A stretch of 64,000 bases of DNA, from positions 310,001 to 374,000 of the IMG/VR virus record IMGVR_UViG_3300038463_000730. One strand, written 5' to 3'. Shown piece after piece: positions 10,987 through 59,121 of this stretch. Made by a program: the position numbers and the translations under genes. The first letter of the stretch is position 1. Every line of letters starts with the position of its first letter. The notes beneath the pieces are model-generated. The model saw only the letters and a list, made by a program, of their open reading frames with translations. It was not told the DNA's origin and did not search any database.

Positions 10987-12492
10987 CTATCGGGCGCCCG
11001 TCGAGAATTCCAGGATGTACTTAATCCGGTGCTGTTGCGACGGACCGGTCGCGTTGTAGACGATCAATTCGTCGTTGAGCAAAGCCTGACCCATCTTCGC
11101 CCAAACCGAATGGTCTCCTTTTAGATCACCCTTCCGAATGAACGTGGCATTGTGAACGATGCGCTGATTCCCGAACGCACAATCGGCGAGGAACAAAAAC
11201 GCCTTGTCTGCCTGCCCAGCTGCCCAATACGAGCCCCGGACGTCAGTGTAATTGATGCTCTTCGTCGAGTGCGCGGCCCAGTAGATACCGTCACCGAACA
11301 TCGAACCAGCATGCGGAACTCCAGAAGGCCGGATCAATAGTCCCTTCGTCGTGATCCCGACCATGTTGGCTCGCCGCGTTCCGTGCCAAACCGGGATGAC
11401 GTTGGCTCGCTCGTACGCCTTCTGCAATTCCTTCGGAACGTCGGGACGTTCCGGAACATGTCGCTTGAGAATGTCGGGAAGCTGTTGCTTGCCGCATTCC
11501 TTGGCAATCTGCTCGACGTTCGCCAAGAAGTGAGCTTCTTCCTTCTTTCGATTCACCGTGAACGCTCGGTGAAGCTGAAGTTTACCAAGTCCCGAGTGAT
11601 TCCCAGCGCGCGTCTCCAGGAGCATGCGCTGGAGCCATTTGTACGTCAGGGTGGTAGGATCGATGTACTCCAGGTCCGCGTTCAATGTCTCGTACTGAGC
11701 ATCGACCGGAGACTTCGTTGACATGACCTTCTCGGCATTCTTCGCATCTGCAAAGATGTCGAGAATGTCGAACCCCTTGTCGATCTTCGCATCATCATCG
11801 AACCGAAGTAGATCCGCATCGAGGCGCCCATACCCAAAGTTATGCGGGATGTTCGCGTAGTACTTCGACGTGATCCGATTCAACTCGCTCTCGTCGGGCT
11901 TGGATTGGTGAACAATCTTCCGGGCTTCATCGAGAAGGTCACGACCCTTGGCAAGCTGCGCAACGGAGAGCTGCCCGAGCGGACACTTCTTGGTATCGAG
12001 ATTGAGTTCGATGAACTGCGCCGTGGCTCCGAACCATGTTCCGACGAGAGACCGGACTTCTGCGTGAAGCTTGCTCGGTTCACCCTTGGTTTCGACGGTG
12101 TAACCGTTCTTCTTGAGCTGCTCTTCGGTCACGAGCTGTTTCGTAACGATGGCCTTGCCTACTTCGCTTCCCAGGTCGGACTTGACCAGCTCGACCTCTT
12201 CGTAACCCTTCTTCGTCTTCTCTTTGATGATTTGGGCAATCACGGCGTTCGCGTGTGCCTCATTATCGCAGGGACGATACTCTCGGGCCGGATTGTGAGC
12301 ACCGACGCGCCCATACTGGGTATACACACGAACTTTCTTCCCACCCGATGCGGACTGAAGCTCGATGTTGTAATACTTGTTATTGTTTTCGACGATGTCG
12401 GTGAAATTCAGGGTTTTCCTGACCGTAACATCGAAGCTAGCCGGAAACGAGGGTTCGGTACCGGCTTTGCATACTTTGACTTTGTCAACCAT
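10987..12492 (-). CDS. poly(ADP-ribose) polymerase, PARP1-like (WGR + regulatory HD + catalytic ART)
   Basis: WGR-like YTQYGRVG; HD motif PLGQLSVAQL...YYANIPHNFG; catalytic WHGT...GSMFGDGIYWA...KSINY and NDELIVY giving an intact H-Y-E triad. Confidence 0.92.
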   Translation of the reverse strand: MVDKVKVCKAGTEPSFPASFDVTVRKTLNFTDIVENNNKYYNIELQSASGGKKVRVYTQYGRVGAHNPAREYRPCDNEAHANAVIAQIIKEKTKKGYEEVELVKSDLGSEVGKAIVTKQLVTEEQLKKNGYTVETKGEPSKLHAEVRSLVGTWFGATAQFIELNLDTKKCPLGQLSVAQLAKGRDLLDEARKIVHQSKPDESELNRITSKYYANIPHNFGYGRLDADLLRFDDDAKIDKGFDILDIFADAKNAEKVMSTKSPVDAQYETLNADLEYIDPTTLTYKWLQRMLLETRAGNHSGLGKLQLHRAFTVNRKKEEAHFLANVEQIAKECGKQQLPDILKRHVPERPDVPKELQKAYERANVIPVWHGTRRANMVGITTKGLLIRPSGVPHAGSMFGDGIYWAAHSTKSINYTDVRGSYWAAGQADKAFLFLADCAFGNQRIVHNATFIRKGDLKGDHSVWAKMGQALLNDELIVYNATGPSQQHRIKYILEFSTGAR

Positions 12493-12517
12493 GATTCACT
12501 CCTCGGCGTAGGAGTAT

Positions 12518-12546
12518 AGCTTACACATCTATAGCTGAGATGTCAA
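12518..12546 (-). promoter_or_regulatory. sigma70-type promoter for PARP gene
   Basis: TTGACA-17 bp-TAAGCT, followed by a GAGGAG RBS. Confidence 0.7.
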
Positions 12547-13028
12547 GCGCTTTTATTCAGAAAACTAAGTGTCTCCCAACACGTGCCAAGAAGGTTATCA
12601 GATGTCGGAACCTTGTTCTTTTGGCAGCAATACTGCATATACCAGACATGCTCAGCATCGCCCGGAGCACCGAAGATCATTCGCCCAGAGTATAGATACA
12701 TTCCGAACTCTATGTTCGTAGTCAACCCTGGCATGTTCTGCATGTTCCGAGGAACCCAGAACATTACTGCGTCACATTCCTGTAGGTAGGCTTGTTCCCA
12801 ATCAATCTGACAATTGCGATGTTTCCAGATTCCATTCTGAGGTTCTGGAACGATCAGTGTTCCGTCGAACCCAATCGACTCGAAGATTTGGATTGCTTCC
12901 GGTCTCCAACTTTTTACTTCGGCTGACCGTGGAGTCGGTCCGGCCAAGAAAATATGCCGATCTGAAGTCAGATCATCTGAGTCTTCAGGTATCTTCGAAT
13001 CTTTGTCTGAGTAGATTACTTTAATCAT
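12543..13028 (-). CDS. nucleoside 2-deoxyribosyltransferase-like protein
   Basis: IFLAGPTPR...SWR...QIDWE...CDAVMFW...TTNIEFG motif pattern. Confidence 0.75.
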   Translation of the reverse strand: MIKVIYSDKDSKIPEDSDDLTSDRHIFLAGPTPRSAEVKSWRPEAIQIFESIGFDGTLIVPEPQNGIWKHRNCQIDWEQAYLQECDAVMFWVPRNMQNMPGLTTNIEFGMYLYSGRMIFGAPGDAEHVWYMQYCCQKNKVPTSDNLLGTCWETLSFLNKSA

Positions 13029-13294
13029 GGTTTATCGAACTTAAAGCGAAAGTAAATAGAAGTCTGATCATCACCCCAACCCAACGGTCCTGGTAAACCG
13101 GATCCAGGAGCACCACATACCATTTCGTTACGACTGAATCGGTAACAACAGAAGTTAGCGCAACATTGAAACCGGACAGAAGGATCACACCGTGATATCG
13201 GTACAAATACGTTCTGGCTCATGACCACTGCTTTGTATTGACTCGGTGAACAAGTCAGACAAAACAGGGCGAAGAAAATAGCAATCCATCTCAC
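13025..13294 (-). CDS. small Cys-rich secreted protein
   Basis: Signal-like N-terminus, multiple Cys. Confidence 0.5.
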   Translation of the reverse strand: MRWIAIFFALFCLTCSPSQYKAVVMSQNVFVPISRCDPSVRFQCCANFCCYRFSRNEMVCGAPGSGLPGPLGWGDDQTSIYFRFKFDKP

Positions 13295-13324
13295 ATAGAA
13301 ATGTGAGAATATTGCTTAACCAGT

Positions 13325-14470
13325 TTACTTCGTAACGAGCTTCAGATACTTCTTGAAATCATCGTCTAGTTCGAACTTAGTACCGTACGGTATCATCAAT
13401 GCTAGCTTACAGTCACCACTAAGCTGTGACATGGTATCATGGTCTTGTTCCGATATCTCCGCGCCAGTCGGATCTTCGTATTTGTAGTATCCGCGTCCGC
13501 CGCTCTTACGGGCCAAGGATGAAACCAACTGAGCCTTCTTCTTCGAAGCCATCGATGTGATAATCTTCGGTGGGATTATATCCGTTGTGCCGAGCTTCTT
13601 GATTAAGGTATGTGTCGTTGACACATCGCAATAGTATCCGTTCTTGATACCTTCCTTGATGTTCGTCTCAAAGTCTTTCGAACCGAAGCCTCCCCAAGTA
13701 TCTAGCCACAGCATTGCTTTCGGTATAGGTTTGTAGCTGAACGTATCTACAAAACCATAGCTGCCATAGCTATGACCTCTAGGGTCTTTCGTCTTGGAGG
13801 TATGAGTAAAGGTAGCCGTGCTGACCCAACCGCAGAATACTTTCTGCTTACCAGTCTTCCCCTCGAAGACATCTCCAACCTGAAATGTCGAAGCATCAAG
13901 CTTCTTGGAATTGTTCGCGGCTACAGCCGCCAACAAACCCTTGTGCAATTCCGAACCAACCCGAATGAGTTTCATCTGCGAGCCAACTCGTCCGAAGATG
14001 AACTTACCATTCAGAATGCCACCCGGGCTAATACCCTCTTTGATCATGGCATCGAGCATAACGTCTTCCCGCATGTCGAAGTAATACTTCTCAGCGGTCT
14101 TGACCTTGTAAGCCCGACCACCATTGCCACGGTGTTCGAGAGCAACTACCTGGATACCGGTCATGGGCTCATTCTTTCGAGCATCCTGAACAACCGGGTC
14201 AGACTTCTTCAGGTACTTCTTAGTCTCCGGGTCATACCATTGCCGATGTTGCTCGGCCCACTGAATGGCAGTCTTTAGTGTCTTCTTGTTCCCAGATTCG
14301 ATTGGGAACGCCGGGATGATCATCTCCCGTCTCTCATCAATCTTGACGGTTTCACCGTCGTCATCAACTTCATCTTGATCGAGACTTTCGCCCTCCCATT
14401 GCCGGTAGACGGGCTGCTCGACGCTAGATACGATTGTGATCTCTTCGGGTATTGTTCCAATAACTCTCAT
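13325..14470 (-). CDS. hypothetical protein (381 aa)
   Basis: Long ORF with protein-like composition; family not recognised. Confidence 0.75.
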   Translation of the reverse strand: MRVIGTIPEEITIVSSVEQPVYRQWEGESLDQDEVDDDGETVKIDERREMIIPAFPIESGNKKTLKTAIQWAEQHRQWYDPETKKYLKKSDPVVQDARKNEPMTGIQVVALEHRGNGGRAYKVKTAEKYYFDMREDVMLDAMIKEGISPGGILNGKFIFGRVGSQMKLIRVGSELHKGLLAAVAANNSKKLDASTFQVGDVFEGKTGKQKVFCGWVSTATFTHTSKTKDPRGHSYGSYGFVDTFSYKPIPKAMLWLDTWGGFGSKDFETNIKEGIKNGYYCDVSTTHTLIKKLGTTDIIPPKIITSMASKKKAQLVSSLARKSGGRGYYKYEDPTGAEISEQDHDTMSQLSGDCKLALMIPYGTKFELDDDFKKYLKLVTK

Positions 14471-14513: not shown

Positions 14514-15110
14514 CTACTTGAGGTTCATCAGTCGATCGATTTTTTGGATCAAATCGTCCCGAGTAGTAAACTGGAGGACGTTCGGTTTCGGATGAATCTT
14601 GCCGGAATGATCCGTATCCGAAATATCGGTACGCATCGTTACCCAATCGAGATGGACCCGGTACAATCTATTCTTCTCTTTGAAGCGAATATCCTCGCCG
14701 GTTAAAAGAAGTTCCCTGTACTTCATGGAGTACAGGTTGTACTGGTAACTATACTCTATGGCATGGTAGTGCCGTATGTTTTGGCAAACAACATGTTCGT
14801 TACGAACGACCCAGTGTTCTTTCTCCCGGCCACGAATACGAAGACCATTGTTCACCAAGCTCAGTGTCATATTGAGCTTCGATTCCACCGGAACGACCAT
14901 ACTGATTTTGCGAAGACGGTTACCAACCCGAGGCTGATCAACTCCCAAGGCGGGTGTTCCGAACACCGCGCCTTTCTTCTTTTTCGGTTCGATGTTGGCT
15001 TTTTTATCCCACTCAAAATCACCCTTGTTGCCCTTGGAGAACTTCTTCTCACAATAAATGCAACAGCCATCCCGACTATTGAGCATCGCTCCTAACGTTG
15101 TGAACTGCAT
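14514..15110 (-). CDS. hypothetical protein (CxxC; shared C-terminal motif)
   Basis: CCIYC; ends KIDRLMNLK. Confidence 0.7.
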   Translation of the reverse strand: MQFTTLGAMLNSRDGCCIYCEKKFSKGNKGDFEWDKKANIEPKKKKGAVFGTPALGVDQPRVGNRLRKISMVVPVESKLNMTLSLVNNGLRIRGREKEHWVVRNEHVVCQNIRHYHAIEYSYQYNLYSMKYRELLLTGEDIRFKEKNRLYRVHLDWVTMRTDISDTDHSGKIHPKPNVLQFTTRDDLIQKIDRLMNLK

Positions 15111-15137: not shown

Positions 15138-17015
15138 TTACCCAGCCATCTTCACGAAAGCATCTTCCGAAATGAGCTTCACATTGAACTTACGAGCCGC
15201 TTGCGCCTTCGAGCTGGTGCTGGCCGGGTCGTCGATTACAAGGTAGTCCAGAGACTTCCCTACGCTCTTCAACTGCCCACCCTTCGACTCGACCAACGTT
15301 TCCAACTCGGCGCGCTTACGCTTCATCGCTCCGGTGAAGCAGAAGGTTTTACCGGTCAGTGTCCCGAAGATCTTTGCCTTGATCTTTACGCCGTTCTTCT
15401 GGAGATCCTGGATCAATCCGGCGTTGCTTACCAGCCCGTCAAACAACGAACTAGCCTTCTCCGGCCCGAACCCTGGAACGTTCTTCAACTCGTTCTCCGT
15501 GATCTTCATGATCTTGGGGAGAGAGTCGTACCCCGCATCCATGACCATTCTGATCATACTCGCGCCAATCATCGGAATGTTTAGACCACCAAGGAAGTTA
15601 TCGAGCGTGACCTCGCTGTTGGCCCACAATGAGTCGTAAAGGTTCTGCGCCGATTTCTCGCCCATGCGGTCCAGCGCAGCCAACTCCTTCACAGTGAGCG
15701 TATATAGGTCAGCAATCGTCTTGACCTTCTTTGTCTCGTAGAGCTTCTCGACAACCGAGGTTCCCCATTCGAGAATATTGTGCTGAGCAATCCACGAATA
15801 AATGCGCCCCTTGACTTGGGCCGGGCAACCAACGACGTTTGTGCAGATGAGGAAGTCACCTTCGAACTTCGTATCACCCTTGCACTCCGGGCACTTCCTT
15901 GGATACTTCCTGATCGAACCGGTTGTCGTGATGCACTCGTAGACGCGAGGAATAACATCGTTCGAACGCCCGACCAGGATCTCGGCGCCAATGTCGATCG
16001 CAAGCTGACGAACGTACTTGTAATTGTAAAGGCTAGCCCGAGTTACCTTCGCACCAGTCAACGTGACTTCATCGAAGATGCACACCGGAGTAATGTTACC
16101 CGTGTTCCCTACTGAGTCCTCAACATCCCGACAGAACGTCCGGGCCTTCTCGGACTCGAACTTGTACGCCGTGGCACCGTGCGGCTTCAGGTCTTTGTCG
16201 CCCATAGCGATCTGTTCATGCATGTTGTTGACACGCACGACCAATCCATCGATGTCGTAGTCCAACCCGTCACGAGTACTGGCTTGGTAACGGTTCCAAA
16301 TCTTGTTGATCTCTTCGACCGTATCGACGACGCCCCAATTCGGAACCTGCGCGCCGATCTTCTCCAACCACTCAAACTGGTCTTTCTCTGTTTTGAAATC
16401 GACCGTTCCGAGAGACTGGTAGAGAAGGATATCGATATGCTCGACGTCTTTCCCATCGAGCCGCTTCGCCACACCACCAGCGCCGTTCCGAAGGTTCGAC
16501 ATGTCCTTGAAGTGCTTCGCATGGTTCGATCGGAACATGATGATCTCACCACGCAAGCTTCCGGTGAAGGTAGCCGGAACCTTCGTCGGGAGACCATGCA
16601 TCTTGCGCACGTTGACCGTGATATCCTCACCGGTCTTCCCGTCGCCTCTCGTGATACCTTGTACGAGCTTGCCCTTGTCGTAGATCATCTCGATCGAGAT
16701 GCCATCGAGCTTCTCTGTCCAGAAGAGCTTACCCTTGGCTGAGGATGGAAGATTCTTGACCCACTGAGTCATCTCGTCCGGCGTCTGAACCTTCTCCAAG
16801 CTCCCCATCGGGATCTCGTGTCGAGCCTTCTTCCAAGCGGAGTTGACCGGGGCACCGGTCATCGTAAGGGAGGGATGGTTCGGATCCTCGGCTCGCATCT
16901 CAGCGCAAAGCGTGTCGAATGCTGCATCCGACATGATCGGCTTGCTTGTGTTGTAGTACGCAAGCCGTGCCGCAATGATCCGATCGCCCAGCTTCTTGAT
17001 GTCTACCTTGTTCAT
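15138..17015 (-). CDS. ligA: NAD-dependent DNA ligase
   Basis: AYYN...MSDAAFD domain Ia; EKLDG adenylation motif; TRGDG, LRGEI, DGLVVRVN, AYKF; C4 zinc finger; HhH repeats; C-terminal BRCT. Confidence 0.96.
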   Translation of the reverse strand: MNKVDIKKLGDRIIAARLAYYNTSKPIMSDAAFDTLCAEMRAEDPNHPSLTMTGAPVNSAWKKARHEIPMGSLEKVQTPDEMTQWVKNLPSSAKGKLFWTEKLDGISIEMIYDKGKLVQGITRGDGKTGEDITVNVRKMHGLPTKVPATFTGSLRGEIIMFRSNHAKHFKDMSNLRNGAGGVAKRLDGKDVEHIDILLYQSLGTVDFKTEKDQFEWLEKIGAQVPNWGVVDTVEEINKIWNRYQASTRDGLDYDIDGLVVRVNNMHEQIAMGDKDLKPHGATAYKFESEKARTFCRDVEDSVGNTGNITPVCIFDEVTLTGAKVTRASLYNYKYVRQLAIDIGAEILVGRSNDVIPRVYECITTTGSIRKYPRKCPECKGDTKFEGDFLICTNVVGCPAQVKGRIYSWIAQHNILEWGTSVVEKLYETKKVKTIADLYTLTVKELAALDRMGEKSAQNLYDSLWANSEVTLDNFLGGLNIPMIGASMIRMVMDAGYDSLPKIMKITENELKNVPGFGPEKASSLFDGLVSNAGLIQDLQKNGVKIKAKIFGTLTGKTFCFTGAMKRKRAELETLVESKGGQLKSVGKSLDYLVIDDPASTSSKAQAARKFNVKLISEDAFVKMAG

Positions 17016-17066: not shown

Positions 17067-17990
17067 TTACTGTTTCGGGCCTTCACATAGTAGCCGGTCA
17101 AGCTTGCAAAGATTGTCATACTCCTCGACAACCTTCTTATACTCCTCCGGGATACCGTCGAGACCGAAGTAGATTCCAGCCAACCCGCCCGCCATTGCAG
17201 CGATCGTATCGGCATCGCCGCCACCCTTCACGGCGTTGACGACTATGTTTCGGTATCCATAGTGGCGGCTGACGCAATAGAATGCCGCCGCGACACTTTC
17301 GACAACATATCCAGACGTACCGATTACTTCCATTGCAATGGTCGGAGCAATGTCTTTCTCGGCCAACCTGCTCGCAACCAGGAGATGTTGTTTGGTAGCT
17401 GAGTCGGGAAGATGTTCGACGACCTTCTTAATCAGATCCTTCGGCGTTGCTTCGGACCGAGCAAGCAATGCTGCCCCGACAGCAACCGCTACGCCGCCCA
17501 GAATGCACTCCTCGACTTGGTGTGTAATCGATGCATCGATTCGGATGTTGGCCTTGACCTGATCCAAGTCCCGACGAAAGTAGACTCCCATCGGGCAAGC
17601 TCGCATTGCCGTACCGTTTCCTCCAACCGGGATGCCAGTCGGGCCAAGGTGAACGCCGCTCTTATCGAACGGGACGCCTCTCTCCAGACTTTGCATGGCG
17701 GTTCGGGTTGTCCCACCCATTCCGCGGGCGCCGGTCTGGTACCATTCGAGGTAAGCCCGAGCCATGTCGGGACCATCGAACCCGTTCGAGCGAAGCAAAC
17801 TCTTGGTCATTGCCAAGCTCATTTGCGTATCGTCGGTGAACTGACCCGGTTCGAGCTTGTGATATGTCCCTTGAAGGAAATTCCCATCCCAATCTTTGAA
17901 CATCGGGTTCTGAGGAGCTTTCATTTCGAAAGGCATTCCCAAACTGTCACCGATTGCTGTTCCGACCAAACACGCACATTCGTTATTCAT
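17067..17990 (-). CDS. ADP-ribosylglycohydrolase (DraG/ARH family)
   Basis: GTAIGDSLG, FTDDTQM, GNGTAMR, GGDADTIAAMAG motifs. Confidence 0.92.
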   Translation of the reverse strand: MNNECACLVGTAIGDSLGMPFEMKAPQNPMFKDWDGNFLQGTYHKLEPGQFTDDTQMSLAMTKSLLRSNGFDGPDMARAYLEWYQTGARGMGGTTRTAMQSLERGVPFDKSGVHLGPTGIPVGGNGTAMRACPMGVYFRRDLDQVKANIRIDASITHQVEECILGGVAVAVGAALLARSEATPKDLIKKVVEHLPDSATKQHLLVASRLAEKDIAPTIAMEVIGTSGYVVESVAAAFYCVSRHYGYRNIVVNAVKGGGDADTIAAMAGGLAGIYFGLDGIPEEYKKVVEEYDNLCKLDRLLCEGPKQ

Positions 17991-41597: not shown

Positions 41598-41604
41598 TAC
41601 CAAA

Positions 41605-43859: not shown

Positions 43860-43860
43860 G

Positions 43861-46505: not shown

Positions 46506-46573
46506 ACAACAAAAAAGAACACGCCCGATCACTTTTTTCTGCGCTTGAGCTTAAGTCCTTTTCGGAAGCTCGT

Positions 46574-47181: not shown

Positions 47182-47184
47182 AGA

Positions 47185-47613: not shown

Positions 47614-47661
47614 ATCGAGTTCTGAGTGATCCGGATCCTGTATCGTCTAGGTAAAAACGGA

Positions 47662-47997: not shown

Positions 47998-48007
47998 AAG
48001 CCATTAT

Positions 48008-48742: not shown

Positions 48743-48774
48743 TTAGCTCGGTGCCGCGCTAACGCTGATAAAAC

Positions 48775-48807
48775 AAACGGTCGCAATTCAACATTGCGAC
48801 CGTTTTT
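48775..48807. terminator. bidirectional terminator between convergent genes
   Basis: AAACGGTCGCAAT-tcaac-ATTGCGACCGTTTTT. Confidence 0.8.
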
Positions 48808-48813
48808 CGTTGT

Positions 48814-49134
48814 TTACAGCAGTATTTCTAGTCTTTTTGGGACTACTAAGCCGCCATACTCAGATATTTTGGCATCACAAAACGATTTTGTTTCATCAAG
48901 TGTATCGAATTCAGGCTCGTACAGATTGATAATGCGCCATTTATCGTTTAGACCTTGGCAAATCATATGAGAGACAAAGTCTCCTGGCGGAATGGTATTG
49001 ATATACCCGACTTCAAATCTGTAATGAATGGGATGGTTAACTAATAACCCAATTCGCCACGGCATAAACTTTCTGCCACATGTACGGGCGAAGTATTGTG
49101 CTTCGCTTGGGCGATGATCCGGGCGCCCGTTCAC
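48814..49134 (-). CDS. LxPW-family hypothetical protein
   Basis: KFMPW...TLDETKSFCDAKISEYGGLVVPKRLEILL. Confidence 0.6.
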   Translation of the reverse strand: MNGRPDHRPSEAQYFARTCGRKFMPWRIGLLVNHPIHYRFEVGYINTIPPGDFVSHMICQGLNDKWRIINLYEPEFDTLDETKSFCDAKISEYGGLVVPKRLEILL

Positions 49135-49616
49135 TTCTTTTTCGCCTTTAGCTTTTCGGCTTTCTCTTTCAATCGCTCCATTTCACGATTGGTTTGCTCG
49201 ATCTGACGCTGTCTTTCTGCTTCCTGACCTTCATTCCAAATAGCTAGATCCGATTCATACTCTTCCTGGATCTCTTTCGCGCTCATCTTGTGAACGTGAA
49301 TGACCTCAAGACAAAGGTAATCTTCAGAAAACGAAGCAGTAAAGAATACTTTCTTCGGGTCAAGCCCTTCTTTCGCAACCCGCTCGTTAATTTCGATCAA
49401 CGAGATTGACATTCGACTAGAACCAGAAGTTTCTTCCTCATCGTTCTGTTCATCGTCGTCATAGCATTCATCTTCAGCGTTACCATACCCAGGCCAGTGA
49501 TTTACTCTCTGACTAGTAGTGGCGACCGCTTCAATTCTGGATCGTTTTGCGCCAGGCTTCGGCTTCTTTGGCTCATTGTAGAAGTGACGTTCACGCAGGA
49601 GTGGTAACTTACTCAT
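49131..49616 (-). CDS. hypothetical protein
   Basis: Acidic, C-terminal coiled coil. Confidence 0.65.
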   Translation of the reverse strand: MSKLPLLRERHFYNEPKKPKPGAKRSRIEAVATTSQRVNHWPGYGNAEDECYDDDEQNDEEETSGSSRMSISLIEINERVAKEGLDPKKVFFTASFSEDYLCLEVIHVHKMSAKEIQEEYESDLAIWNEGQEAERQRQIEQTNREMERLKEKAEKLKAKKK

Positions 49617-49629
49617 ATTTCCCTATTGA

Positions 49630-49657
49630 TGGTTGGCCGAAGTGGATTCGAACCACC
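49630..49657 (-). pseudogene. 3' fragment of split tRNA-Ile (T arm + acceptor + CCA)
   Basis: GGTGG-TTCGAAT-CCACT-TCGGCCA-A-CCA; complementary to the 5' fragment at 50645-50676. Confidence 0.75.
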
Positions 49658-50137
49658 TCACACAAATGACCTCATTTTAGACAACCGAAAAAACGACTGA
49701 ATGATATCACGAAACAGATACCAATCTATTTTCGGTCGATACCCACCAACTTTATTGGACCACGGAAATATACTCAGCCTATGATCTTGAGTCGGATCAA
49801 TCTGTTTCTCGGTCTTTGAGTCTGAAAACTTGATGGTGAACTCACTTACATTCAAAAGATTTGTTACGACACTTGGCGTAGAATACTCTACATTTCCACC
49901 GCTAGTTCCAACAATAGTGGTGACATCTATATCTAGACTGTTGAAACGGATAACGTTGTAAAACGAAGTAGGCGTACCACACGACCATTCGCCTAACGGG
50001 AATCTTCCAACAAACCTCTTGCGGAACAAGAATATACTATTATCGAAACGAATATGCAACCCTTTGTTACGTTTACTCTGAATACGAGCATCTCGGATTG
50101 AACGAGATAGTTTTTTCTTAATGATTCTTGCTTTCAT
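49658..50137 (-). CDS. hypothetical protein inside the split tRNA
   Basis: 159 aa; stop codon abuts the tRNA 3' fragment; ends RLSKMRSFV. Confidence 0.6.
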   Translation of the reverse strand: MKARIIKKKLSRSIRDARIQSKRNKGLHIRFDNSIFLFRKRFVGRFPLGEWSCGTPTSFYNVIRFNSLDIDVTTIVGTSGGNVEYSTPSVVTNLLNVSEFTIKFSDSKTEKQIDPTQDHRLSIFPWSNKVGGYRPKIDWYLFRDIIQSFFRLSKMRSFV

Positions 50138-50139
50138 TG

Positions 50140-50214
50140 TGTGACGTGGTGGATTTGAACCACCGACCTTCTCTTTATCAGAGAGACTATCTTACCGGAC
50201 TGATATAACGTCAC
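50140..50214 (-). tRNA. trnI: tRNA-Ile(GAT)
   Basis: GTGACGT/ACGTCAC acceptor; TCTCT-CT-GAT-AA-AGAGA. Confidence 0.92.
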
Positions 50215-54224: not shown

Positions 54225-54518
54225 TCACTTTCTTCCTAATGCACAACCGGTATGCGGCATACACTCCAATCCATAGATTGTTTGGCCTACCGCTAGATCA
54301 CATTTGTCATAGCGATAGTTCCACTCTTGACAATGAATAGCGGTTGGTTCGAGCTTCATTTGGTTGGCCCATGTTTTCGCCGCATCTTCCGCCCAACCTG
54401 GATTTACCGGCGTCCCACGCGCAAAAGCGAAAACAAGTGCCACGAAAGCTATCATGATAAAAAAGATAGCCGTAGCCATCAAAAGAATGAATCTACCTCT
54501 ATCACGTTCAAGCAGCAT
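54225..54518 (-). CDS. membrane-anchored Cys-containing protein
   Basis: N-terminal TM helix, four Cys. Confidence 0.6.
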   Translation of the reverse strand: MLLERDRGRFILLMATAIFFIMIAFVALVFAFARGTPVNPGWAEDAAKTWANQMKLEPTAIHCQEWNYRYDKCDLAVGQTIYGLECMPHTGCALGRK

Positions 54519-55980
54519 TTGCTCTCGCCCTCACATCCTCGAACGTATCGTTGATGAAGATCTCGCCATCTTCATACACCGTGATCATTACAGAGTCCGG
54601 GTGAACACCCTGGCCTTCAGCGAGCTTGATCGTTGTCAAACGACCATTAACTCGGATCAAATCGAGACGACCACGCTTGCTCGACTTGTTTGTGTCGGTC
54701 TTCGGACGCTTATACACATCAACCTCTTTTCCATTCACCGTAATCGAGCTGCACTTCATCGCGAAAGACAACGTGTCCCGGTTAACTTGCTGAAGCAACG
54801 CGCCGCCCATGCCAAAGGCCACGTTCTCCGCAGCCCAGCCATGATTGAATAGATTCTCCAGAATCGCATTGATGCTCTTCCGATTGATTCCGTCGCCCTG
54901 GATAACCCGGACGCTAGGATGAAGTACCTTGAAACCCTTAGCGTTGACCGTGAAGCCGTATGCGTCACCGAGCCATTCGACGCAGTTCAATACTACGTCG
55001 GGTGGATTACCAGAATCGGGGCGCACGACCAATCTTGCGCCGGAGGCCAAAACTTCTGCTTTTAGTGTCGTTCCCCAATGCTGCTTGACAGCAACCTCCA
55101 AATCATAACTGTCCGACACACAAGCCACCAAAGTACCGGGTTTGGCAAATACGCGAAGGATATTACGATACGCCTCGACTTCATTTTCTTCGCCCCACGA
55201 TGTAATGCTGGAGTGCTCCGATGCCGGAATTGAGAATCCGGCCATTCCGGCGTGATAACAAAGGTTAGCCATCGCCACGCCAATGCAGGTATCCGAGCCC
55301 ATGAAATTGACGAGGTGAGCCGCAGCGCCGATGCTGACCGTCTCCTTGCTCGAACCGCCACGCGAACCGAAGTCGTGTAGCCGGAACAATAGCTCGGTTG
55401 CCGGATCACCACCGGTATCGATCAACCAACGACGAATATCCTGCTTGATGTAGTAAGAATTCGTGCAGACCGTAATCGGATACCAAACTCGCAGAAGCAT
55501 GGTTTCGAGGAACGAGACACACCAAAATGTGCTCGGCCCACCGGTTGACTCGACGCTCATCAGCATCTCATGAAGCGGAACGATCGTGCCTTCCGGAACT
55601 GCACGGATACGAAGCGGCCAGCGACCCTTGTATTTAGTCGCAATCTCCATGAACCCGTCATAGTTGAACGGTTCACCGTGTTCGGCATAGAAAGCCCTGG
55701 CTTGCTCGACCATCTCAACGGTGATCTTGATCGCAAGATACTTCGGCAGGATGTATTGCAGCGCGCCGAAGAAAACCAAGTTATGCATGTCCGCTTCTTG
55801 CGCAAGTCTGGCTTCGATGTAGCTAAACATCGAACTTGTTCCAGGTGGATATTGCAAGTAGTGGCTGACCTTATAGCTGTCAGCATCAATTAACGGGTTA
55901 TCAAGAATCGACCAGCTCAGTACATTGTACTGGTCTATGAATAGGTTTTGTAGCGTTTTCATTTTACTCTCCGTGTCCAA
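54508..55980 (-). CDS. nadV: nicotinamide phosphoribosyltransferase (NAMPT)
   Basis: DADSYKVSH, LHDFGSRG, SIPASEHS, VSDSYD, RPDSG, IQGDG, FGMGGALLQ, RDT..FAMK. Confidence 0.95.
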   Translation of the reverse strand: MDTESKMKTLQNLFIDQYNVLSWSILDNPLIDADSYKVSHYLQYPPGTSSMFSYIEARLAQEADMHNLVFFGALQYILPKYLAIKITVEMVEQARAFYAEHGEPFNYDGFMEIATKYKGRWPLRIRAVPEGTIVPLHEMLMSVESTGGPSTFWCVSFLETMLLRVWYPITVCTNSYYIKQDIRRWLIDTGGDPATELLFRLHDFGSRGGSSKETVSIGAAAHLVNFMGSDTCIGVAMANLCYHAGMAGFSIPASEHSSITSWGEENEVEAYRNILRVFAKPGTLVACVSDSYDLEVAVKQHWGTTLKAEVLASGARLVVRPDSGNPPDVVLNCVEWLGDAYGFTVNAKGFKVLHPSVRVIQGDGINRKSINAILENLFNHGWAAENVAFGMGGALLQQVNRDTLSFAMKCSSITVNGKEVDVYKRPKTDTNKSSKRGRLDLIRVNGRLTTIKLAEGQGVHPDSVMITVYEDGEIFINDTFEDVRARANAA

Positions 55981-57409: not shown

Positions 57410-57415
57410 TGTATT

Positions 57416-57805
57416 TCACTTTCCAAGTAGTTCGGCGTCTGTTATTTTCTGGATTCGCTCTTTCTCTGTCCTGAGCCGCTCGATACTGGTGAGCAAATCC
57501 TTGTTCGGGCTTCCGCCGAGTTTCTTGATCGTTCCAACGCTATTCATTGCGGTCGTGATATCGCGTTCGAGCTTGCGAAGGTCTTCTTCCAACTCTTCTC
57601 GTTTGTGAGAGAGTAGTTCTCTTCGAGTTGCATCGACCCGGTCCCGAATCTCCTTCGGGAGACGATCTCGTTGTCCATTGGTCTCGATGAATAGAGCCAA
57701 CTTGTGAGCTAAGCTCTGCGCCTTGCAAGCTCGGGTATGTTCGTGTTCCGCATTCTTTTTTGGTTGGACCGGAGGGTCTTCCATGTAATCACATCGACAG
57801 GGCAT
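57416..57805 (-). CDS. hypothetical protein
   Basis: MPCRCDY start, coiled coil. Confidence 0.65.
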   Translation of the reverse strand: MPCRCDYMEDPPVQPKKNAEHEHTRACKAQSLAHKLALFIETNGQRDRLPKEIRDRVDATRRELLSHKREELEEDLRKLERDITTAMNSVGTIKKLGGSPNKDLLTSIERLRTEKERIQKITDAELLGK

Positions 57806-57820
57806 AGTAATTCTCCATTT

Positions 57821-58093
57821 CTAAGCCAAACATCTTACCTTATTCCAAAGTCTCAAGCCTTCTTGTACCGATTCAGCTTTCTGGATTATCTTCCATGCTC
57901 GTTCGGCATCATATTGGGCTGCGAAACCTATAACCGTAATGCTCGGTACCTTAGTGTATTTCCCATAATAGTTTCTAGTTGATCCTTGTTTGCTGTAGTC
58001 TATTAGAGGACAGACTAAAGTAATATCATTATCCTGATCAACTATCGTACATAAGGTACCGGCATTGTTTCCTTTAACGTATAGTCCGATCAT
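57821..58093 (-). CDS. hypothetical protein
   Basis: 90 aa coupled ORF. Confidence 0.5.
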   Translation of the reverse strand: MIGLYVKGNNAGTLCTIVDQDNDITLVCPLIDYSKQGSTRNYYGKYTKVPSITVIGFAAQYDAERAWKIIQKAESVQEGLRLWNKVRCLA

Positions 58094-59121
58094 CGCCTAT
58101 AGCTGCGGCCTCCCTGTGTGAAGAAGTTGACGACGTGAAAGTGATCCTCGAAGAATTCCTCTTCGCGAGTCTGAAACTCACTGAGCGGCATCCACCAAGC
58201 TTTGTCCGCATCATCGGCTCCCTTCACCATCGGAAGCAAACCGCTTCCAAGATCGAAGTAGAACCCATGAGTAATCGTACGACCTCGAAGGCTACGACCT
58301 GGAGCATCGAAGACGTGTTCACCCTCGATTGACTTCATCAAGTCAGCTGCATTGACCTTAATGCCCGTCTCCTCGCGCAGCTCCCGCACACAACCATCCA
58401 CAATGAACTCGTGTTGATTGAGGAAGCCTCCAGGCAGGGCGATCAGGCCTTTACCGAGTGCGCCCTTTCTACGAACAACCAGTACGTGCCCTGACTTGAT
58501 CACGATCGCATCGGTCGTAACGAATGTTGGGCTGAACGGAGCGCCGCGCCATTCTTCCTTGTATTGGTTGATATGATCAAACTCCGCCTTCAACCGCTCG
58601 AACTGAGCGGTCTTCTGGAACTCGACCATGAACTCCGCAGTCTTCGGATGGACGAACTTTTTGAAGCCCGCGTCCAGCGTGAAGTACAGGTTTCGGATGT
58701 CTGTAGCGTGTGTAGGGACATCCGTCTTGAAGTCAATAGGTTCGCCCCACTGCGGGAAGAGGTTCATGTAGTAGCTTGACCTATCGCTTTTGTGCCCTAT
58801 CAACTTAACGTTGTCAGAGTACTCAGTATAGTCAGCGACCTTCTGCTGAATCTCTACGATCCAGTTATTCTCCTGGTAGAGATAATCCCGAATCGGAATG
58901 AACTCTACGCGAGCGTTCTGCTCGGGAGTCAACGTGACGCGAATCATCTGTTCGCGTTCGTCAGATGTCCAAGGGTTCTTGCTGGTGGGCGCTTTCTTAT
59001 GGCTACCCAGCACGACAATTACCTTCTCCGCCAATGTCAGACCCTCTTGCAGGATCATGTTATGACCGAGGTGGAACGGTTCGAAACGACCAATAAATAC
59101 GACGTGGCTTAGCTTTTGCAT
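58090..59121 (-). CDS. nadM: bifunctional NMN adenylyltransferase / ADP-ribose pyrophosphatase (NadM-Nudix)
   Basis: FIGRFEPFHLGH (HxGH) cytidyltransferase-like domain; ALPGGFLNQHE...VRELREETG Nudix; SLRGRTITH. Confidence 0.94.
   Translation of the reverse strand: MQKLSHVVFIGRFEPFHLGHNMILQEGLTLAEKVIVVLGSHKKAPTSKNPWTSDEREQMIRVTLTPEQNARVEFIPIRDYLYQENNWIVEIQQKVADYTEYSDNVKLIGHKSDRSSYYMNLFPQWGEPIDFKTDVPTHATDIRNLYFTLDAGFKKFVHPKTAEFMVEFQKTAQFERLKAEFDHINQYKEEWRGAPFSPTFVTTDAIVIKSGHVLVVRRKGALGKGLIALPGGFLNQHEFIVDGCVRELREETGIKVNAADLMKSIEGEHVFDAPGRSLRGRTITHGFYFDLGSGLLPMVKGADDADKAWWMPLSEFQTREEEFFEDHFHVVNFFTQGGRSYRR

What the first reader, a model, noticed from the sequence alone, without database searches (positions are those of the whole stretch)
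10987..59121. Complete dispersed NAD+/ADP-ribose write-erase-recycle circuit
Seen: writer (PARP 10987), eraser (ARH/DraG 17067), four Nudix domains (23193, 31752, 41605, NadM C-terminus), NAMPT (54508), NMNAT (58090), a NadR-like kinase (40617), an N-glycosidase/deoxyribosyltransferase-like gene directly upstream of PARP (12543) and an NAD+-consuming ligase (15138). Established: PARP releases nicotinamide, which NAMPT and NMNAT recycle to NAD+; Nudix converts ADP-ribose to AMP and ribose-5-P. Inference: the phage runs a reversible ADP-ribosylation signalling cycle with its own NAD+ supply, which goes beyond simple NAD+ reconstitution.
Basis: partly seen in the sequence, partly recalled or inferred. 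Interest (0 to 1): 0.7.

Follow-up and report, generated by a model that had tools for sequence, protein, structure and literature searches.

The report
Jumbo-phage NAD+ salvage plus PARP–ligase–ARH module
A 435-kb peat phage carries a known NAD+-rebuilding gene pair and a eukaryote-like PARP enzyme clustered with a DNA ligase and an ADP-ribose-removing hydrolase; all the genes are real, but a single dispersed "circuit" is only partly supported and the general idea is already published.

Summary
The genome is a complete 434.7-kb jumbo myovirus from peat metagenomes.

Two modules are well supported:
- **NAD+ salvage.** A NARP2-type pair, NadV/NAMPT plus NadM-Nudix, both scoring above NCBIfam cut-offs.
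- **PARP cluster.** A PARP2-like enzyme (WGR, helical and catalytic domains, H-Y-E triad invariant in 20 homologues) in a tight co-directional array: ARH, LigA, three small or unknown ORFs, NDT-like, PARP, then a strong terminator.

Comparative genomics supports a writer-eraser pair tied to DNA nick repair:
- The ARH-LigA-PARP cluster is conserved in the closest relatives.
- All five near-complete PARP-bearing genomes (this one and four relatives) carry at least one ARH. One PARP-less relative has no ARH and no NAMPT.
- Distant phage PARPs sit beside other ADP-ribose-processing domains (Macro, NADAR, SLOG) and beside ATP-dependent ligase, Ku or helicases.

The rest of the proposed circuit is not supported. 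The three free Nudix genes have no assignable substrate, and two of them, with the "NadR-like" kinase, lie inside a tRNA and end-repair region. The NDT-like protein shows no NAD+ link. No Macro, PARG or PRPP synthetase is present.

NAD+ synthesis plus use in jumbo phages is published. Verdict: a new member of a known kind, moderate interest.

The parts
10987..12492 (-). PARP2-like poly(ADP-ribose) polymerase (WGR + helical regulatory domain + catalytic domain, 501 aa), the only recognised ADP-ribosyl writer in the genome
   Evidence: Pfam. Best solved relative is human PARP2 WGR-HD-CAT, E 2e-31. H370/Y404/E475 invariant in 20 homologues. 664 homologues at E<=1e-10, many on 340-500 kb contigs. 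Searches with the ADPrib_exo_Tox (PF03496) and SIR2 families found nothing.
10925..10964 (-). Strong terminator-like hairpin (18-bp stem, T-rich tail) 23 nt after the PARP stop; likely end of the ARH-to-PARP transcription unit
   Evidence: No comparable hairpin lies between ARH and PARP. Consensus scan only.
12543..13028 (-). Stand-alone nucleoside deoxyribosyltransferase / N-glycosidase-like (DrHyd superfamily) protein, 161 aa
   Evidence: PF15891, 41 bits. AF2 model pLDDT 90. Fold matches 4MCJ (TM 0.70), YtoQ, the retron-Ec86 effector and MilB CMP N-glycosidase. In relatives it is the N-terminal domain of a roughly 400-aa NDT+Nudix fusion located elsewhere. It lies next to PARP only here and in L168.
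13025..13294 (-). Small conserved ORF (89 aa) overlapping the NDT-like gene start by 4 nt
   Evidence: 70% identical orthologue in the same position in L168.
13325..14470 (-). Conserved 381-aa protein of unknown function that travels with the NAD+/PARP genes
   Evidence: No Pfam family. Only function-unknown PHROGs. Orthologues lie between LigA and PARP in L168 and L169 and beside NadM/NAMPT in G001 and G002. The single-sequence AF2 model failed, pLDDT 31.
14514..15110 (-). 198-aa ORF of unknown function between LigA and the 381-aa ORF
   Evidence: Weak orthologue in L169.
15138..17015 (-). NAD+-dependent DNA ligase LigA (625 aa)
   Evidence: TIGR00575, 452 bits, above cut-off. Full domain set. 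Found upstream of PARP in 26 of 30 IMG/VR relatives and in L168 and L169.
17067..17990 (-). ADP-ribosylglycohydrolase (ARH, 307 aa), 51 nt upstream of LigA; the only ARH in the genome; belongs to the clade's paralogue group B
   Evidence: PF03747, 239 bits. Metal-site motifs intact. Below the DraG and Tri1 equivalog cut-offs. Groups with the 'far' paralogues at 100/99 support, on a long branch. 84% identical orthologue in the same position in L168.
23193..23957 (-). Nudix hydrolase, weakly MutT-like, with a CxxC...CxxC element before the Nudix fold
   Evidence: Orthologues of 29-35% identity in G002, G003, G004 and G007. Substrate not assignable.
30958..31755 (-). Calcineurin-like metallophosphoesterase, start overlapping the stop of the Nudix at 31752; in relatives its orthologue lies between LigA and PARP
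   Evidence: Pfam. phrog_1649. Position in relatives. No solved homologue by sequence.
31752..32252 (-). Nudix hydrolase (166 aa), translationally coupled to the metallophosphoesterase
   Evidence: Intact Nudix box with Pro at +15, a rule for ADP-ribose pyrophosphatases recalled from memory and only a hint.
40617..41165 (-). P-loop kinase of the AAA_28 family (182 aa); the NadR-like assignment is unproven
   Evidence: PF13521, 32 bits. No NadR NCBIfam hit. Best PHROG is thymidylate kinase, 46.7 bits. No PDB hit. Orthologues in G002, G003, G006 and G007, absent from G001, G004 and G015.
41605..42144 (-). Nudix hydrolase with an N-terminal zinc ribbon (NudC-like architecture, lacking the NADH-pyrophosphatase motif)
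   Evidence: Flanked by tRNA-Phe. Orthologues of 37-43% identity in G003, G004 and G007.
54508..55980 (-). Nicotinamide phosphoribosyltransferase (NadV/NAMPT), first enzyme of NARP2
   Evidence: NAMPT_N + NAPRTase. NF006629, 578 bits against a cut-off of 405. Present in 10 of 14 related records. No PRPP-synthetase/Adps-like gene in the genome.
58090..59121 (-). Bifunctional NMN adenylyltransferase / Nudix (NadM-Nudix), second enzyme of NARP2
   Evidence: NF003791, 418.5 bits against a cut-off of 409. Orthologues of 47-60% identity directly upstream of NAMPT in 8 relatives.
29403..50214 (-). Context: 15 tRNA genes, plus a polynucleotide kinase-phosphatase at 43861-44796, fill most of the 36.5 kb that separates NAMPT from ARH in this phage
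   Evidence: ARAGORN. Pnkp Pfam. In relatives, NAMPT and an ARH copy are only 1-6 kb apart.

Best explanation
The window holds two functional modules of the jumbo-phage NAD+/ADP-ribose toolkit. They share a metabolite, but nothing shows them to be one designed circuit.

**Module 1: NARP2.** NadV/NAMPT converts nicotinamide and host PRPP to NMN. NadM adenylates NMN to NAD+, and its Nudix domain splits ADP-ribose to AMP and ribose-5-phosphate. This keeps NAD+ available during infection and counters NAD+-depleting host defences.

**Module 2: PARP cluster.** It is an operon-like array: ARH, LigA, three small or unknown ORFs, NDT-like, PARP, then a terminator. The PARP has the PARP2 architecture.

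**Inferred mechanism for module 2.** The WGR domain recognises nicks or breaks in replicating or attacked phage DNA. That releases the helical autoinhibitory domain, and the H-Y-E catalytic site ADP-ribosylates itself or nearby targets using NAD+. LigA, also NAD+-dependent, seals the nick. ARH trims the ADP-ribose and resets the system.

**Link between the modules.** Module 1 supplies the NAD+ that PARP and LigA consume, and can recycle the nicotinamide and ADP-ribose they release.

**Peripheral genes.** The three free Nudix proteins, the AAA_28 kinase and the NDT-like N-glycosidase are accessory nucleotide or RNA enzymes. Their membership in the cycle is unproven.

**Shown versus inferred.** Shown: domain identities, intact motifs, synteny and phyletic patterns. 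Inferred: DNA-break activation, targets, ARH substrate, and flux between the modules.
For: **Identities and motifs**
-.

**Operon-like array**
- Gaps of 51 nt or less from ARH to PARP.
- A strong hairpin directly after PARP.

**Synteny**
- L168 (PARP 81% identical) is fully collinear, including ARH (84%), LigA (78%), NDT (66%) and PARP.
- L169 (PARP 73%) keeps ARH, LigA and PARP.
- LigA lies upstream of PARP in 26 of 30 IMG/VR relatives.
- NadM, NAMPT, ARH-A, LigA, metallophosphoesterase and PARP are collinear within about 25 kb in G002, G003, G007 and G013.

**Phyletic pattern**
- ARH occurs in 12 of 14 PARP-bearing records, including all four that are at least 90% complete.
- The TerL-selected relative G015 (97% complete) lacks PARP, ARH and NAMPT but keeps LigA.

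**Independent lineages**
- LR756511: metallophosphoesterase, WGR-PARP, ATP-dependent ligase, ARH.
- P0132 contig: metallophosphoesterase, ATP ligase, Ku, PARP.
- L020: UvrD, Macro, PARP.
- NADAR 3-4 kb downstream of PARP in clade relatives and on the P0122 contig.
- YpsA/SLOG beside PARP.
- SNF2 helicase beside PARP.

**Established function**
- NARP2 was shown experimentally for the KVP40 genes (10.1101/2024.02.11.579819).
Against: - No expression or biochemical data exist. Only DNA runs from peat hold this sequence.
- From general knowledge, an ARH3-type enzyme degrades PAR chains and serine-linked ADP-ribose but not the Glu/Asp ester that a PARP makes without HPF1. That step needs a Macro domain, which is missing here (19 bits, below cut-off).
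- The ARH substrate is unassigned. It falls below the DraG and Tri1 cut-offs and is about equally distant from ARH3, DraG and Tri1.
- In the 55-62%-identity relatives, no ARH lies within 10 kb of PARP, and one ARH paralogue sits beside NAMPT instead.
- NAMPT/NadM are dispensable in PARP-bearing relatives: G004 lacks both and G001 lacks NadM.
- The phyletic counts are few and the genomes are not phylogenetically independent.
- The metallophosphoesterases of the different lineages share only the superfamily.
Confidence: 0.55

Rival explanations
1. All ten genes form one integrated write-erase-recycle circuit. PARP writes and ARH erases. Four Nudix domains degrade the ADP-ribose. NAMPT, NMNAT and a NadR-like kinase rebuild NAD+. 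The NDT-like glycosidase feeds or regulates the cycle.
For: - All ten genes lie in 48 kb (93 of 647 ORFs) on one strand.
- All the genome's Nudix, ARH and PARP genes are in this window.
- In relatives the core genes are collinear within about 25 kb.
- NadM, AAA_28 and NDT share one presence/absence pattern among the six near-complete genomes.
- Nudix31 has Pro at +15 and is coupled to a metallophosphoesterase whose orthologue lies between LigA and PARP in relatives.
Against: - The three free Nudix proteins match no ADP-ribose pyrophosphatase equivalog. The best hits are MutT, NudC or generic.
- Nudix41 and AAA_28 sit among tRNA genes beside Pnkp.
- The best PHROG for AAA_28 is thymidylate kinase.
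- The NDT-like fold matches nucleotide N-glycosidases. It adjoins PARP only in the nearest subclade.
- The shared phyletic pattern may simply mark a subclade.
- NAMPT/NadM are absent from some PARP+ARH genomes.
Confidence: 0.2
2. The genes are functionally unrelated counter-defence and takeover tools that merely share an accessory-gene region. NARP2 only defeats NAD+-depleting defences. ARH removes ADP-ribose placed on phage or host molecules by host ART-type defences or toxins. PARP modifies host proteins for takeover, as T4 Alt and Mod enzymes do. The Nudix enzymes sanitise nucleotides or decap RNA.
For: - NARP2 is an experimentally shown anti-defence pathway (10.1101/2024.02.11.579819).
- Iyer et al. 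argue that phage ARG domains act on macromolecular adducts and could counter host ADP-ribosylation, and that phage PARPs may act like ARTs on host proteins (PMC9503650, PMC7824862).
- Relatives carry a second ARH paralogue next to NAMPT rather than PARP.
- ARH occurs in many jumbo phages that gave no PARP hit in my searches.
- Accessory genes cluster in jumbo phages anyway.
Against: - It does not explain the recurrent PARP-ligase linkage with non-orthologous ligases.
- It does not explain the repeated placement of different ADP-ribose-processing domains beside PARP in distant lineages.
- It does not explain the joint absence of PARP, ARH and NAMPT in G015.
- WGR plus the helical domain is the DNA-break-sensing architecture, not that of a host-protein ART.
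Confidence: 0.2
3. The PARP ADP-ribosylates nucleic-acid ends, as reported for PARP2 and PARP3 on phosphorylated DNA termini. This would mark or protect phage DNA ends or nicks. ARH here, and NADAR or Macro in relatives, would remove the mark before ligation.
For: - Closest solved relative is PARP2.
- Persistent linkage to ligases, Ku and a metallophosphoesterase.
- NADAR, known from DarT-type DNA ADP-ribosylation systems (PMC9503650), lies 3-4 kb downstream of PARP in relatives.
- Non-canonical DNA ADP-ribosylation is reviewed in PMC8883491, which I listed but did not read in detail.
Against: - This is purely inferential.
- This phage lacks NADAR.
- Nothing in the sequence separates protein targets from DNA targets.
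Confidence: 0.1

Closest known systems
NARP2 / Vibrio phage KVP40 NadV + NatV NAD+ salvage (10.1101/2024.02.11.579819; Lee et al. 2017, as cited there)
   Same: - A NAMPT-family enzyme plus a bifunctional NMNAT-Nudix, both scoring above NCBIfam equivalog cut-offs.
- Encoded 2.1 kb apart on one strand.
- No Adps/Prs-like partner in the genome.
- Directly adjacent in relatives.
   Different: - Here four unrelated ORFs (HNH-like, radical SAM, Nmad5-like, and a small ORF) separate the two genes.
- In clade relatives an ARH paralogue and a nucleotidyltransferase ride with the pair.
- Activity and anti-defence effect are untested.
Eukaryotic DNA-dependent PARPs (PARP2/PARP3) with ARH3 and the PARP-ligase single-strand-break repair logic
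   Same: - WGR + helical regulatory + catalytic domains with the H-Y-E triad.
- Best solved match is human PARP2.
- An ARH-family hydrolase with all metal-site motifs.
- Physical linkage to a DNA ligase.
   Different: - About 30% identity only, and YGR instead of WGR in the signature.
- No HPF1, PARG, XRCC1 or Macro eraser was recognised, although PARG, HPF1 and XRCC1 were not searched.
- The ligase is bacterial-type LigA.
- Targets are unknown, and a bacterial host has no chromatin.
The NAD+-ADP-ribose network of jumbo phages (Iyer et al. 2021, PMC7824862; 2022, PMC9503650) and 'NAD-jumbo phages' (PMC11662467)
   Same: - The same building blocks have been catalogued: NadV, NadM, Nudix, LigA, PARP/PART and ARG.
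- The idea that jumbo phages both make NAD+ and spend it on LigA and PARP is stated in PMC11662467.
- 'NAD-salvage islands' are described in PMC13573597.
   Different: - ARG domains are reported in only about 5% of jumbo phages (PMC9503650).
- I found no description in those papers of a WGR-PARP / ligase / ARH cluster, or of its recurrence with non-orthologous ligases and erasers.
Bacterial PARP with PARG/ARH3-like erasers (Perina et al. 2014, PMC4245714)
   Same: - A horizontally mobile PARP with a conserved triad, accompanied by a candidate eraser.
- That survey already noted PARP homologues in phages (Aeh1, Cellulophaga phi4:1) and ARH3-like proteins in dsDNA viruses.
   Different: - Those phage PARPs match only the catalytic domain of this protein, at 25-33% coverage.
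- This clade has the full WGR-HD-CAT architecture and uses ARH rather than PARG.

Membership tests
DNA-dependent PARP (PARP1-3-like clade) | WGR domain, helical regulatory (PARP_reg) domain and PARP catalytic domain in that order | tested here: met
   PF05406 59 bits, PF02877 69 bits and PF00644 76 bits, all above cut-off. The alignment to human PARP2 covers all three.
DNA-dependent PARP (PARP1-3-like clade) | H-Y-E catalytic triad | tested here: met
   H370, Y404 and E475 are invariant in 20 homologues. H and Y align with the PARP2 motifs. E475 lies in NDELITY, outside the printed alignment.
DNA-dependent PARP (PARP1-3-like clade) | Activation by DNA breaks and synthesis of ADP-ribose chains | not testable with these tools
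   Needs enzyme assays.
NARP2 (phage NAD+ reconstitution pathway 2) | NAMPT-type nicotinamide phosphoribosyltransferase | tested here: met
   NAMPT_N + NAPRTase. NF006629, 578 bits against a cut-off of 405.
NARP2 (phage NAD+ reconstitution pathway 2) | NMN adenylyltransferase encoded in the same phage | tested here: met
   NadM-Nudix, NF003791, 418.5 bits against 409. It lies 2.1 kb from NAMPT on the same strand.
NARP2 (phage NAD+ reconstitution pathway 2) | No Adps (PRPS-like) partner, which would indicate NARP1 instead | tested here: met
   No Pribosyltran_N match in G000, while the control genomes all matched.
NARP2 (phage NAD+ reconstitution pathway 2) | Restores NAD+ and overcomes NAD+-depleting defence | not testable with these tools
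   Needs infection assays and metabolomics.
ADP-ribosylglycohydrolase (ARH/DraG family) | Full-length ADP_ribosyl_GH fold with binuclear-metal motifs | tested here: met
   PF03747, 239 bits over 1-287 of 287. GDSLGMPFE, FTDDT and GGDADT are present.
ADP-ribosylglycohydrolase (ARH/DraG family) | Membership of a characterised subfamily (DraG, Tri1) | tested here: not met
   TIGR02662, 105 bits against a cut-off of 337. NF041672, 111 bits against 490. About equally distant from ARH3, Tri1 and DraG chains.
ADP-ribose pyrophosphatase type Nudix (for the three free Nudix genes) | Nudix box GX5EX7REUXEEXGU | tested here: met
   Present in all four Nudix domains.
ADP-ribose pyrophosphatase type Nudix (for the three free Nudix genes) | Specific similarity to characterised ADP-ribose pyrophosphatases | tested here: inconclusive
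   No equivalog cut-off was reached. Best hits are MutT (Nudix23), YtkD or generic (Nudix31), and NudC or NadM-Nudix at 30 bits (Nudix41). Only Nudix31 has Pro at +15, a rule recalled from memory.
NadR ribosylnicotinamide kinase | Similarity to the NadR kinase domain | tested here: inconclusive
   AAA_28, 32 bits against 27. No NadR NCBIfam match. No PDB match. Best PHROG is thymidylate kinase, 46.7 bits.
Nucleoside 2-deoxyribosyltransferase / DrHyd N-glycosidase superfamily | Fold and family profile | tested here: met
   PF15891, 41 bits. Model pLDDT 90. 4MCJ at TM 0.70; NDT and MilB at TM 0.5-0.6.
Nucleoside 2-deoxyribosyltransferase / DrHyd N-glycosidase superfamily | Acts on NAD+ or ADP-ribose derivatives | not testable with these tools
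   Context only. It is fused to Nudix in relatives.
NAD+-dependent DNA ligase LigA | Adenylation, OB, HhH and BRCT domains with an equivalog-level score | tested here: met
   TIGR00575, 452 bits against 444; NF005932, 417 bits against 369. Domains. The Nlig-Ia domain is just below cut-off (26 against 27).

The most novel reading that the evidence does not exclude
A large clade of roughly 450-kb phages from peat and other metagenomes, together with unrelated huge phages, carries a minimal PARP-dependent DNA-nick response. It consists of a PARP2-like break sensor, a DNA ligase (NAD+- or ATP-dependent, sometimes with Ku and a phosphoesterase) and an interchangeable ADP-ribose eraser (ARH, Macro, NADAR or SLOG), backed by phage-made NAD+. 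That would be a prokaryotic-virus counterpart, and possibly a forerunner, of eukaryotic PARP-ligase single-strand-break repair.
Probability: 0.3. Interest if true: 0.75.

Novelty: new member of a known kind. Interest (0 to 1): 0.45.

Why it matters
If the PARP-ligase-eraser module works as inferred, DNA-break signalling by poly(ADP-ribose) would operate inside bacteria during phage infection. That process is usually regarded as eukaryotic. It would give a tractable two- or three-protein system for studying its origin.

It would also explain why some jumbo phages pay the metabolic cost of NARP2. They must feed two NAD+-consuming DNA enzymes, PARP and LigA, while hosts try to destroy NAD+.

As it stands, the finding is mainly a well-populated example of the published jumbo-phage NAD+/ADP-ribose toolkit.

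Tried and rejected
- **Close relatives in GenBank.** Megablast of the NAMPT-NadM region against GenBank phages found nothing. TerL has only about 25% identity to any GenBank phage, so no named relative exists.
- **Unbiased relative set.** TerL-based recruitment from IMG/VR gave mostly fragments. Only one new near-complete genome (G015) was usable.
- **The conserved 381-aa ORF (13325-14470).** The single-sequence AF2 model was unusable at pLDDT 31. The ESM Atlas gave no usable hit. Its function stays unknown.
- **PDB sequence searches.** Nothing useful for the metallophosphoesterase, the AAA_28 kinase or the NDT-like protein.
- **Metallophosphoesterases across lineages.** The enzymes of this phage and LR756511 show no pairwise similarity. 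The recurrence of a metallophosphoesterase near PARP holds only at superfamily level.
- **Expression data.** Public runs holding this DNA are peat DNA metagenomes only, with no RNA run (the first attempt found the tool busy).
- **Promoters.** Promoter-like sites were fewer than expected from shuffles, so no promoter is claimed.
- **Complex prediction.** I considered complex prediction for PARP with ARH and rejected it. No direct binding is claimed, since an eraser need not bind its writer.
- **An earlier provisional conclusion.** I first concluded that ARH is never near PARP in relatives. The closest relatives showed this holds only for the 55-62%-identity relatives.
- **NARP1.** Rejected for this phage, since it has no Adps/Prs-like gene.

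Full report
**What the window is.** The window is bases 310,001-374,000 of a single 434,688-bp IMG/VR virus record rated 100% complete by CheckV. The genome encodes a terminase, portal, tail sheath, family-B DNA polymerase and ribonucleotide reductase. About 93% of it is coding, and most genes are on the minus strand. It is therefore a jumbo myovirus. It has no close GenBank relative: megablast finds nothing, and TerL is about 25% identical to the nearest phage. Near-identical DNA occurs in several peat metagenomes.

**Checking the observation.** Pfam and NCBIfam give the following.

| Window coordinates | Assignment | Score |
|---|---|---|
| 10987-12492 | WGR + PARP_reg + PARP catalytic | above cut-offs |
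| 12543-13028 | Nuc_deoxyri_tr2 | 41 bits |
| 15138-17015 | LigA | above equivalog cut-off |
| 17067-17990 | Full-length ADP-ribosylglycohydrolase | 239 bits |
| 23193-23957, 31752-32252, 41605-42144 | Nudix | 56-66 bits |
| 40617-41165 | AAA_28 | 32 bits |
| 54508-55980 | NAMPT_N + NAPRTase (NF006629) | 578 bits, cut-off 405 |
| 58090-59121 | NMNAT + Nudix (NF003791) | 418.5 bits, cut-off 409 |

The four Nudix domains and the ARH are the only ones in the whole genome. Searches with the ADPrib_exo_Tox ART family and SIR2 found nothing, so PARP is the only recognised ADP-ribosyl writer.

Catalytic motifs are intact:
- PARP H370, Y404 and E475 are invariant in 20 homologues.
- The ARH metal-site motifs are present.
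- The Nudix box is present four times.

The ten genes occupy 93 of 647 ORFs. Counted conservatively as four independent units, the chance of such clustering is about 0.01.

Two labels are too strong:
- The "NadR-like kinase" has no NadR-specific hit, and its best PHROG is thymidylate kinase.
- "Complete" ignores the lack of a Macro domain (19 bits, below cut-off), NADAR or PRPP synthetase in this genome. PARG was not searched.

**The PARP end of the region.** ARH, LigA, a 198-aa ORF, a 381-aa ORF, an 89-aa ORF, the NDT-like gene and PARP follow one another with gaps of 51 nt or less, or with overlaps. An 18-bp-stem hairpin with a T-rich tail lies 23 nt after the PARP stop, and nothing comparable lies inside the array. 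This looks like one transcription unit, though that rests on a consensus scan only. The PARP's best solved relative is human PARP2 across WGR, helical domain and catalytic domain (E 2e-31).

**Relatives.** PARP has 664 homologues at E<=1e-10. Many are 55-62% identical and lie on 340-500 kb contigs, so this is a populous clade of huge phages. I examined three sets.

- *Closest relatives.* A 21.5-kb contig with PARP 81% identical is collinear with the window from about 5 to 23 kb. It includes ClpP, ARH (84%), LigA (78%), the 381-aa ORF (63%), NDT (66%) and PARP. A 114-kb contig with PARP 73% identical keeps ARH, LigA, the 381-aa ORF and PARP, but not NDT.
- *Thirty IMG/VR loci at 55-62% identity.* LigA lies 4-8 kb upstream of PARP in 26. 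An orthologue of the window's metallophosphoesterase (30958-31755) often lies between them. Neither ARH nor NDT is within 10 kb.
- *Whole-record searches of 14 of those records.* ARH is present in 12, including all four that are at least 90% complete, and often in two copies. NAMPT is present in 10, and NadM-Nudix in 8.

In G002, G003, G007 and G013 the order is NadM, NAMPT, ARH, about 10 kb, LigA, (phosphoesterase), PARP, all within about 25 kb on one strand. The window has the same order. Here, however, 36.5 kb containing 15 tRNA genes and a Pnkp-type enzyme separates NAMPT from ARH.

The clade has two ARH paralogue groups. One lies beside NAMPT and one lies about 30 kb further upstream. The window's ARH groups with the second at 100/99 support, on a long branch. 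This phage has therefore lost the NAMPT-adjacent copy.

**Presence and absence in near-complete genomes**.

| Genome | PARP | LigA | ARH | NAMPT | NadM | Extra Nudix |
|---|---|---|---|---|---|---|
| G000 (this phage) | + | + | B | + | + | 3 |
| G001 | + | + | A, plus a split B | + | - | 0 |
| G002 | + | + | A | + | + | 1 |
| G003 | + | + | A and B | + | + | 3 |
| G004 | + | + | B | - | - | 2 |
| G015 (chosen by TerL; 61% identical, 97% complete) | - | + | - | - | not tested | not tested |

Every PARP-bearing genome thus has an ARH, and the one PARP-less genome has none. The salvage pair is dispensable. The sample is small and the genomes are not phylogenetically independent.

**Independent lineages.** More distant WGR-PARPs show the following neighbours.

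| Contig (PARP identity to the window) | Neighbourhood |
|---|---|
| LR756511, 595 kb (29%) | ClpX, metallophosphoesterase, WGR-PARP, ATP-dependent DNA ligase, ARH |
| P0132 contig (41%) | Metallophosphoesterase, ATP-dependent ligase, methyltransferase, Ku, then PARP 2-5 kb on |
| IMG/VR contig L020 (34%) | Macro-domain protein directly upstream of PARP, after a UvrD helicase |
| P0122 contig (45%) | NADAR 3 kb downstream; clade relatives have it 3-4 kb downstream |
| P0143 contig (32%) | YpsA/SLOG 0.7 kb upstream |
| P0127 contig (39%) | SNF2 helicase adjacent, DUF4326 upstream |
| P0129 contig and the cellular P0140 contig | Nothing telling |

Across lineages, PARP therefore recurs with (a) a DNA ligase or other DNA-repair enzyme, including non-orthologous ligases, and (b) one of several unrelated ADP-ribose-processing domains. 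This is the strongest evidence that PARP has an eraser partner and works on DNA nicks or breaks. The phosphoesterases of the different lineages share only the superfamily.

**The peripheral genes.**
- *Free Nudix proteins.* None reaches any equivalog cut-off. Nudix23 is weakly MutT-like. Nudix41 has a zinc ribbon plus Nudix, like NudC, but lacks the NADH-pyrophosphatase motif. Nudix31 has a proline 15 residues after the box and is translationally coupled to the phosphoesterase. The proline rule for ADP-ribose pyrophosphatases is recalled from memory and is only a hint.
- *Genomic setting.* Nudix41 and the kinase sit among tRNA genes beside Pnkp, which is equally compatible with RNA-end or nucleotide metabolism.
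- *NDT-like protein.* It models confidently (pLDDT 90). It matches a putative nucleoside deoxyribosyltransferase (4MCJ, TM 0.70), YtoQ, the retron-Ec86 effector, true NDTs and the CMP N-glycosidase MilB. In G002, G003, G006 and G007 its orthologue is the N-terminal half of a roughly 400-aa NDT+Nudix fusion located elsewhere. It is a nucleotide N-glycosidase of unknown substrate.
- *Shared pattern.* NadM, AAA_28 and NDT share one presence/absence pattern among the six near-complete genomes. This may simply mark a subclade.

**Explanation.** The best-supported reading is two modules.
1. NARP2, whose function was shown experimentally for the KVP40 genes: nicotinamide plus PRPP gives NMN, then NAD+ (10.1101/2024.02.11.579819).
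2. A PARP2-like nick or break sensor co-transcribed with LigA and an ARH eraser.

Both PARP and LigA consume NAD+, so a phage NAD+ supply is a plausible support, especially against NADase defences. That coupling is metabolic inference. Some PARP+ARH genomes lack the salvage genes.

One biochemical caveat comes from general knowledge. ARH3-type enzymes do not remove Glu/Asp-linked ADP-ribose, and no Macro domain is present. Erasure may therefore be incomplete, or the targets may differ from those of eukaryotic PARPs.

Rivals are the single ten-gene circuit, fully independent counter-defence functions, and DNA-end ADP-ribosylation. They are set out in the Rival explanations section, with tests.

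**Comparison with what is known.**
- Iyer et al. catalogued NadV, NadM, Nudix, LigA, PARP/PART and ARG domains in jumbo phages. They noted that ARG occurs in only about 5% of them and that every NadM-bearing phage has NadV (PMC7824862, PMC9503650).
- A 2024 study states that "NAD-jumbo phages" both synthesise NAD+ and encode NAD+-dependent LigA and PARP1-like proteins for replication and repair (PMC11662467).
- "NAD-salvage islands" were described in 2026 (PMC13573597).
- Perina et al. listed phage PARPs and viral ARH3-like proteins in 2014 (PMC4245714).

I did not find in the searchable literature the conserved WGR-PARP / ligase / eraser linkage with non-orthologous displacement. Nor did I find a description of this large clade carrying full-length PARP2-like enzymes.

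**Verdict.** This is a new member of a known kind, with interest 0.45. The most novel reading still open is a phage PARP-dependent nick-repair module, with probability about 0.3.

Noticed in passing
window 29403-50214 (and 63599-63768): Fifteen tRNA genes on the minus strand are interspersed with Nudix31, the AAA_28 kinase, Nudix41 and a Pnkp-type enzyme. Two further ARAGORN calls at 63599-63768 have abnormal two-base anticodons.
   Followed up: partly
window 43861-44796 (-): Polynucleotide kinase-phosphatase-like protein (AAA_33 kinase + PNK3P/HAD phosphatase). It is an end-healing enzyme that suggests tRNA or DNA repair next to the tRNA cluster.
   Followed up: no
window 55990-57805 (-): An HNH-like ORF, a radical SAM protein (321 aa) and a weak Nmad5 (nucleotide-modification-associated) ORF separate NAMPT from NadM. 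In G009 and G013 a 67-69% identical radical SAM gene lies 1-2.5 kb downstream of PARP instead. This may be a nucleotide- or DNA-modification function.
   Followed up: partly
window 13325-14470 (-): A 381-aa protein with no Pfam family is conserved between LigA and PARP in the closest relatives and beside NadM/NAMPT in G001 and G002. It may be an unrecognised component of the NAD+/PARP toolkit. Structure prediction failed.
   Followed up: partly
window 51264-51893 (-): A Pol-beta-type nucleotidyltransferase whose orthologues (51% identical) lie between NAMPT and the NAMPT-adjacent ARH in G001 and G002.
   Followed up: no
L152-L155 (G003:34251-35222, G007:31981-32913, G006:22722-23828, G002:97010-97348): Relatives encode a roughly 400-aa fusion of the NDT-like domain with a divergent Nudix domain. 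This phage has only the stand-alone NDT-like half, moved next to PARP.
   Followed up: partly
G002:174583, G003:115023, G007:117349, G004:20748; L161:8540-8971: NADAR-domain genes lie 3-4 kb downstream of PARP in G002, G003 and G007 and on the P0122 contig, and about 8.5 kb downstream in G004. G007 has a second copy beside the NAMPT-adjacent ARH. This phage has no NADAR.
   Followed up: partly
G001:405624-406446; G005:28645-28975: The second ARH paralogue of G001 is split into two ORFs. The AAA_28 orthologue of G005 is interrupted by a TAA stop. Both look like decaying accessory genes.
   Followed up: no
P0132 contig (ENA ERZ1426817; no DNA held): Metallophosphoesterase, ATP-dependent DNA ligase, methyltransferase, Ku and then a WGR-PARP within 6 kb. 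This is an NHEJ-like set next to a PARP on a phage-like or plasmid-like contig.
   Followed up: partly
window 20334-20942 (-); L160:4981-6339: ClpP lies 2.3 kb upstream of ARH here and in L168. A ClpX-like ATPase lies 5 kb upstream of PARP in LR756511. This may be coincidence.
   Followed up: no
window 1950-4832 (-): DUF2201 metallopeptidase/VWA-like protein (551 aa) next to a weak AAA ATPase (375 aa, 81% identical in L169). It resembles a MoxR/VWA-type pair.
   Followed up: no
L169:6321-6848 and 12103-12345; L164:9064-10152: Relatives carry translation genes near PARP: IF3 and ribosomal protein L12 in L169, and a class-I release factor in L164. From general knowledge, huge phages often carry translation genes.
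   Followed up: no
G001:22451-22828; G004:349787-350161: PRPP-synthetase-like genes occur only in the two complete relatives that lack NadM. Whether they are Prs or NARP1-type Adps was not examined.
   Followed up: no
whole record G000: IMG/VR labels the record's ends 'provirus'. The identical PARP is also on record on a 502,994-bp contig, so about 68 kb was trimmed. Whether that flank is host DNA or phage DNA was not checked.
   Followed up: no
L020:6084-8807: The UvrD-like helicase upstream of the Macro-PARP pair carries an intein with a LAGLIDADG endonuclease.
   Followed up: no
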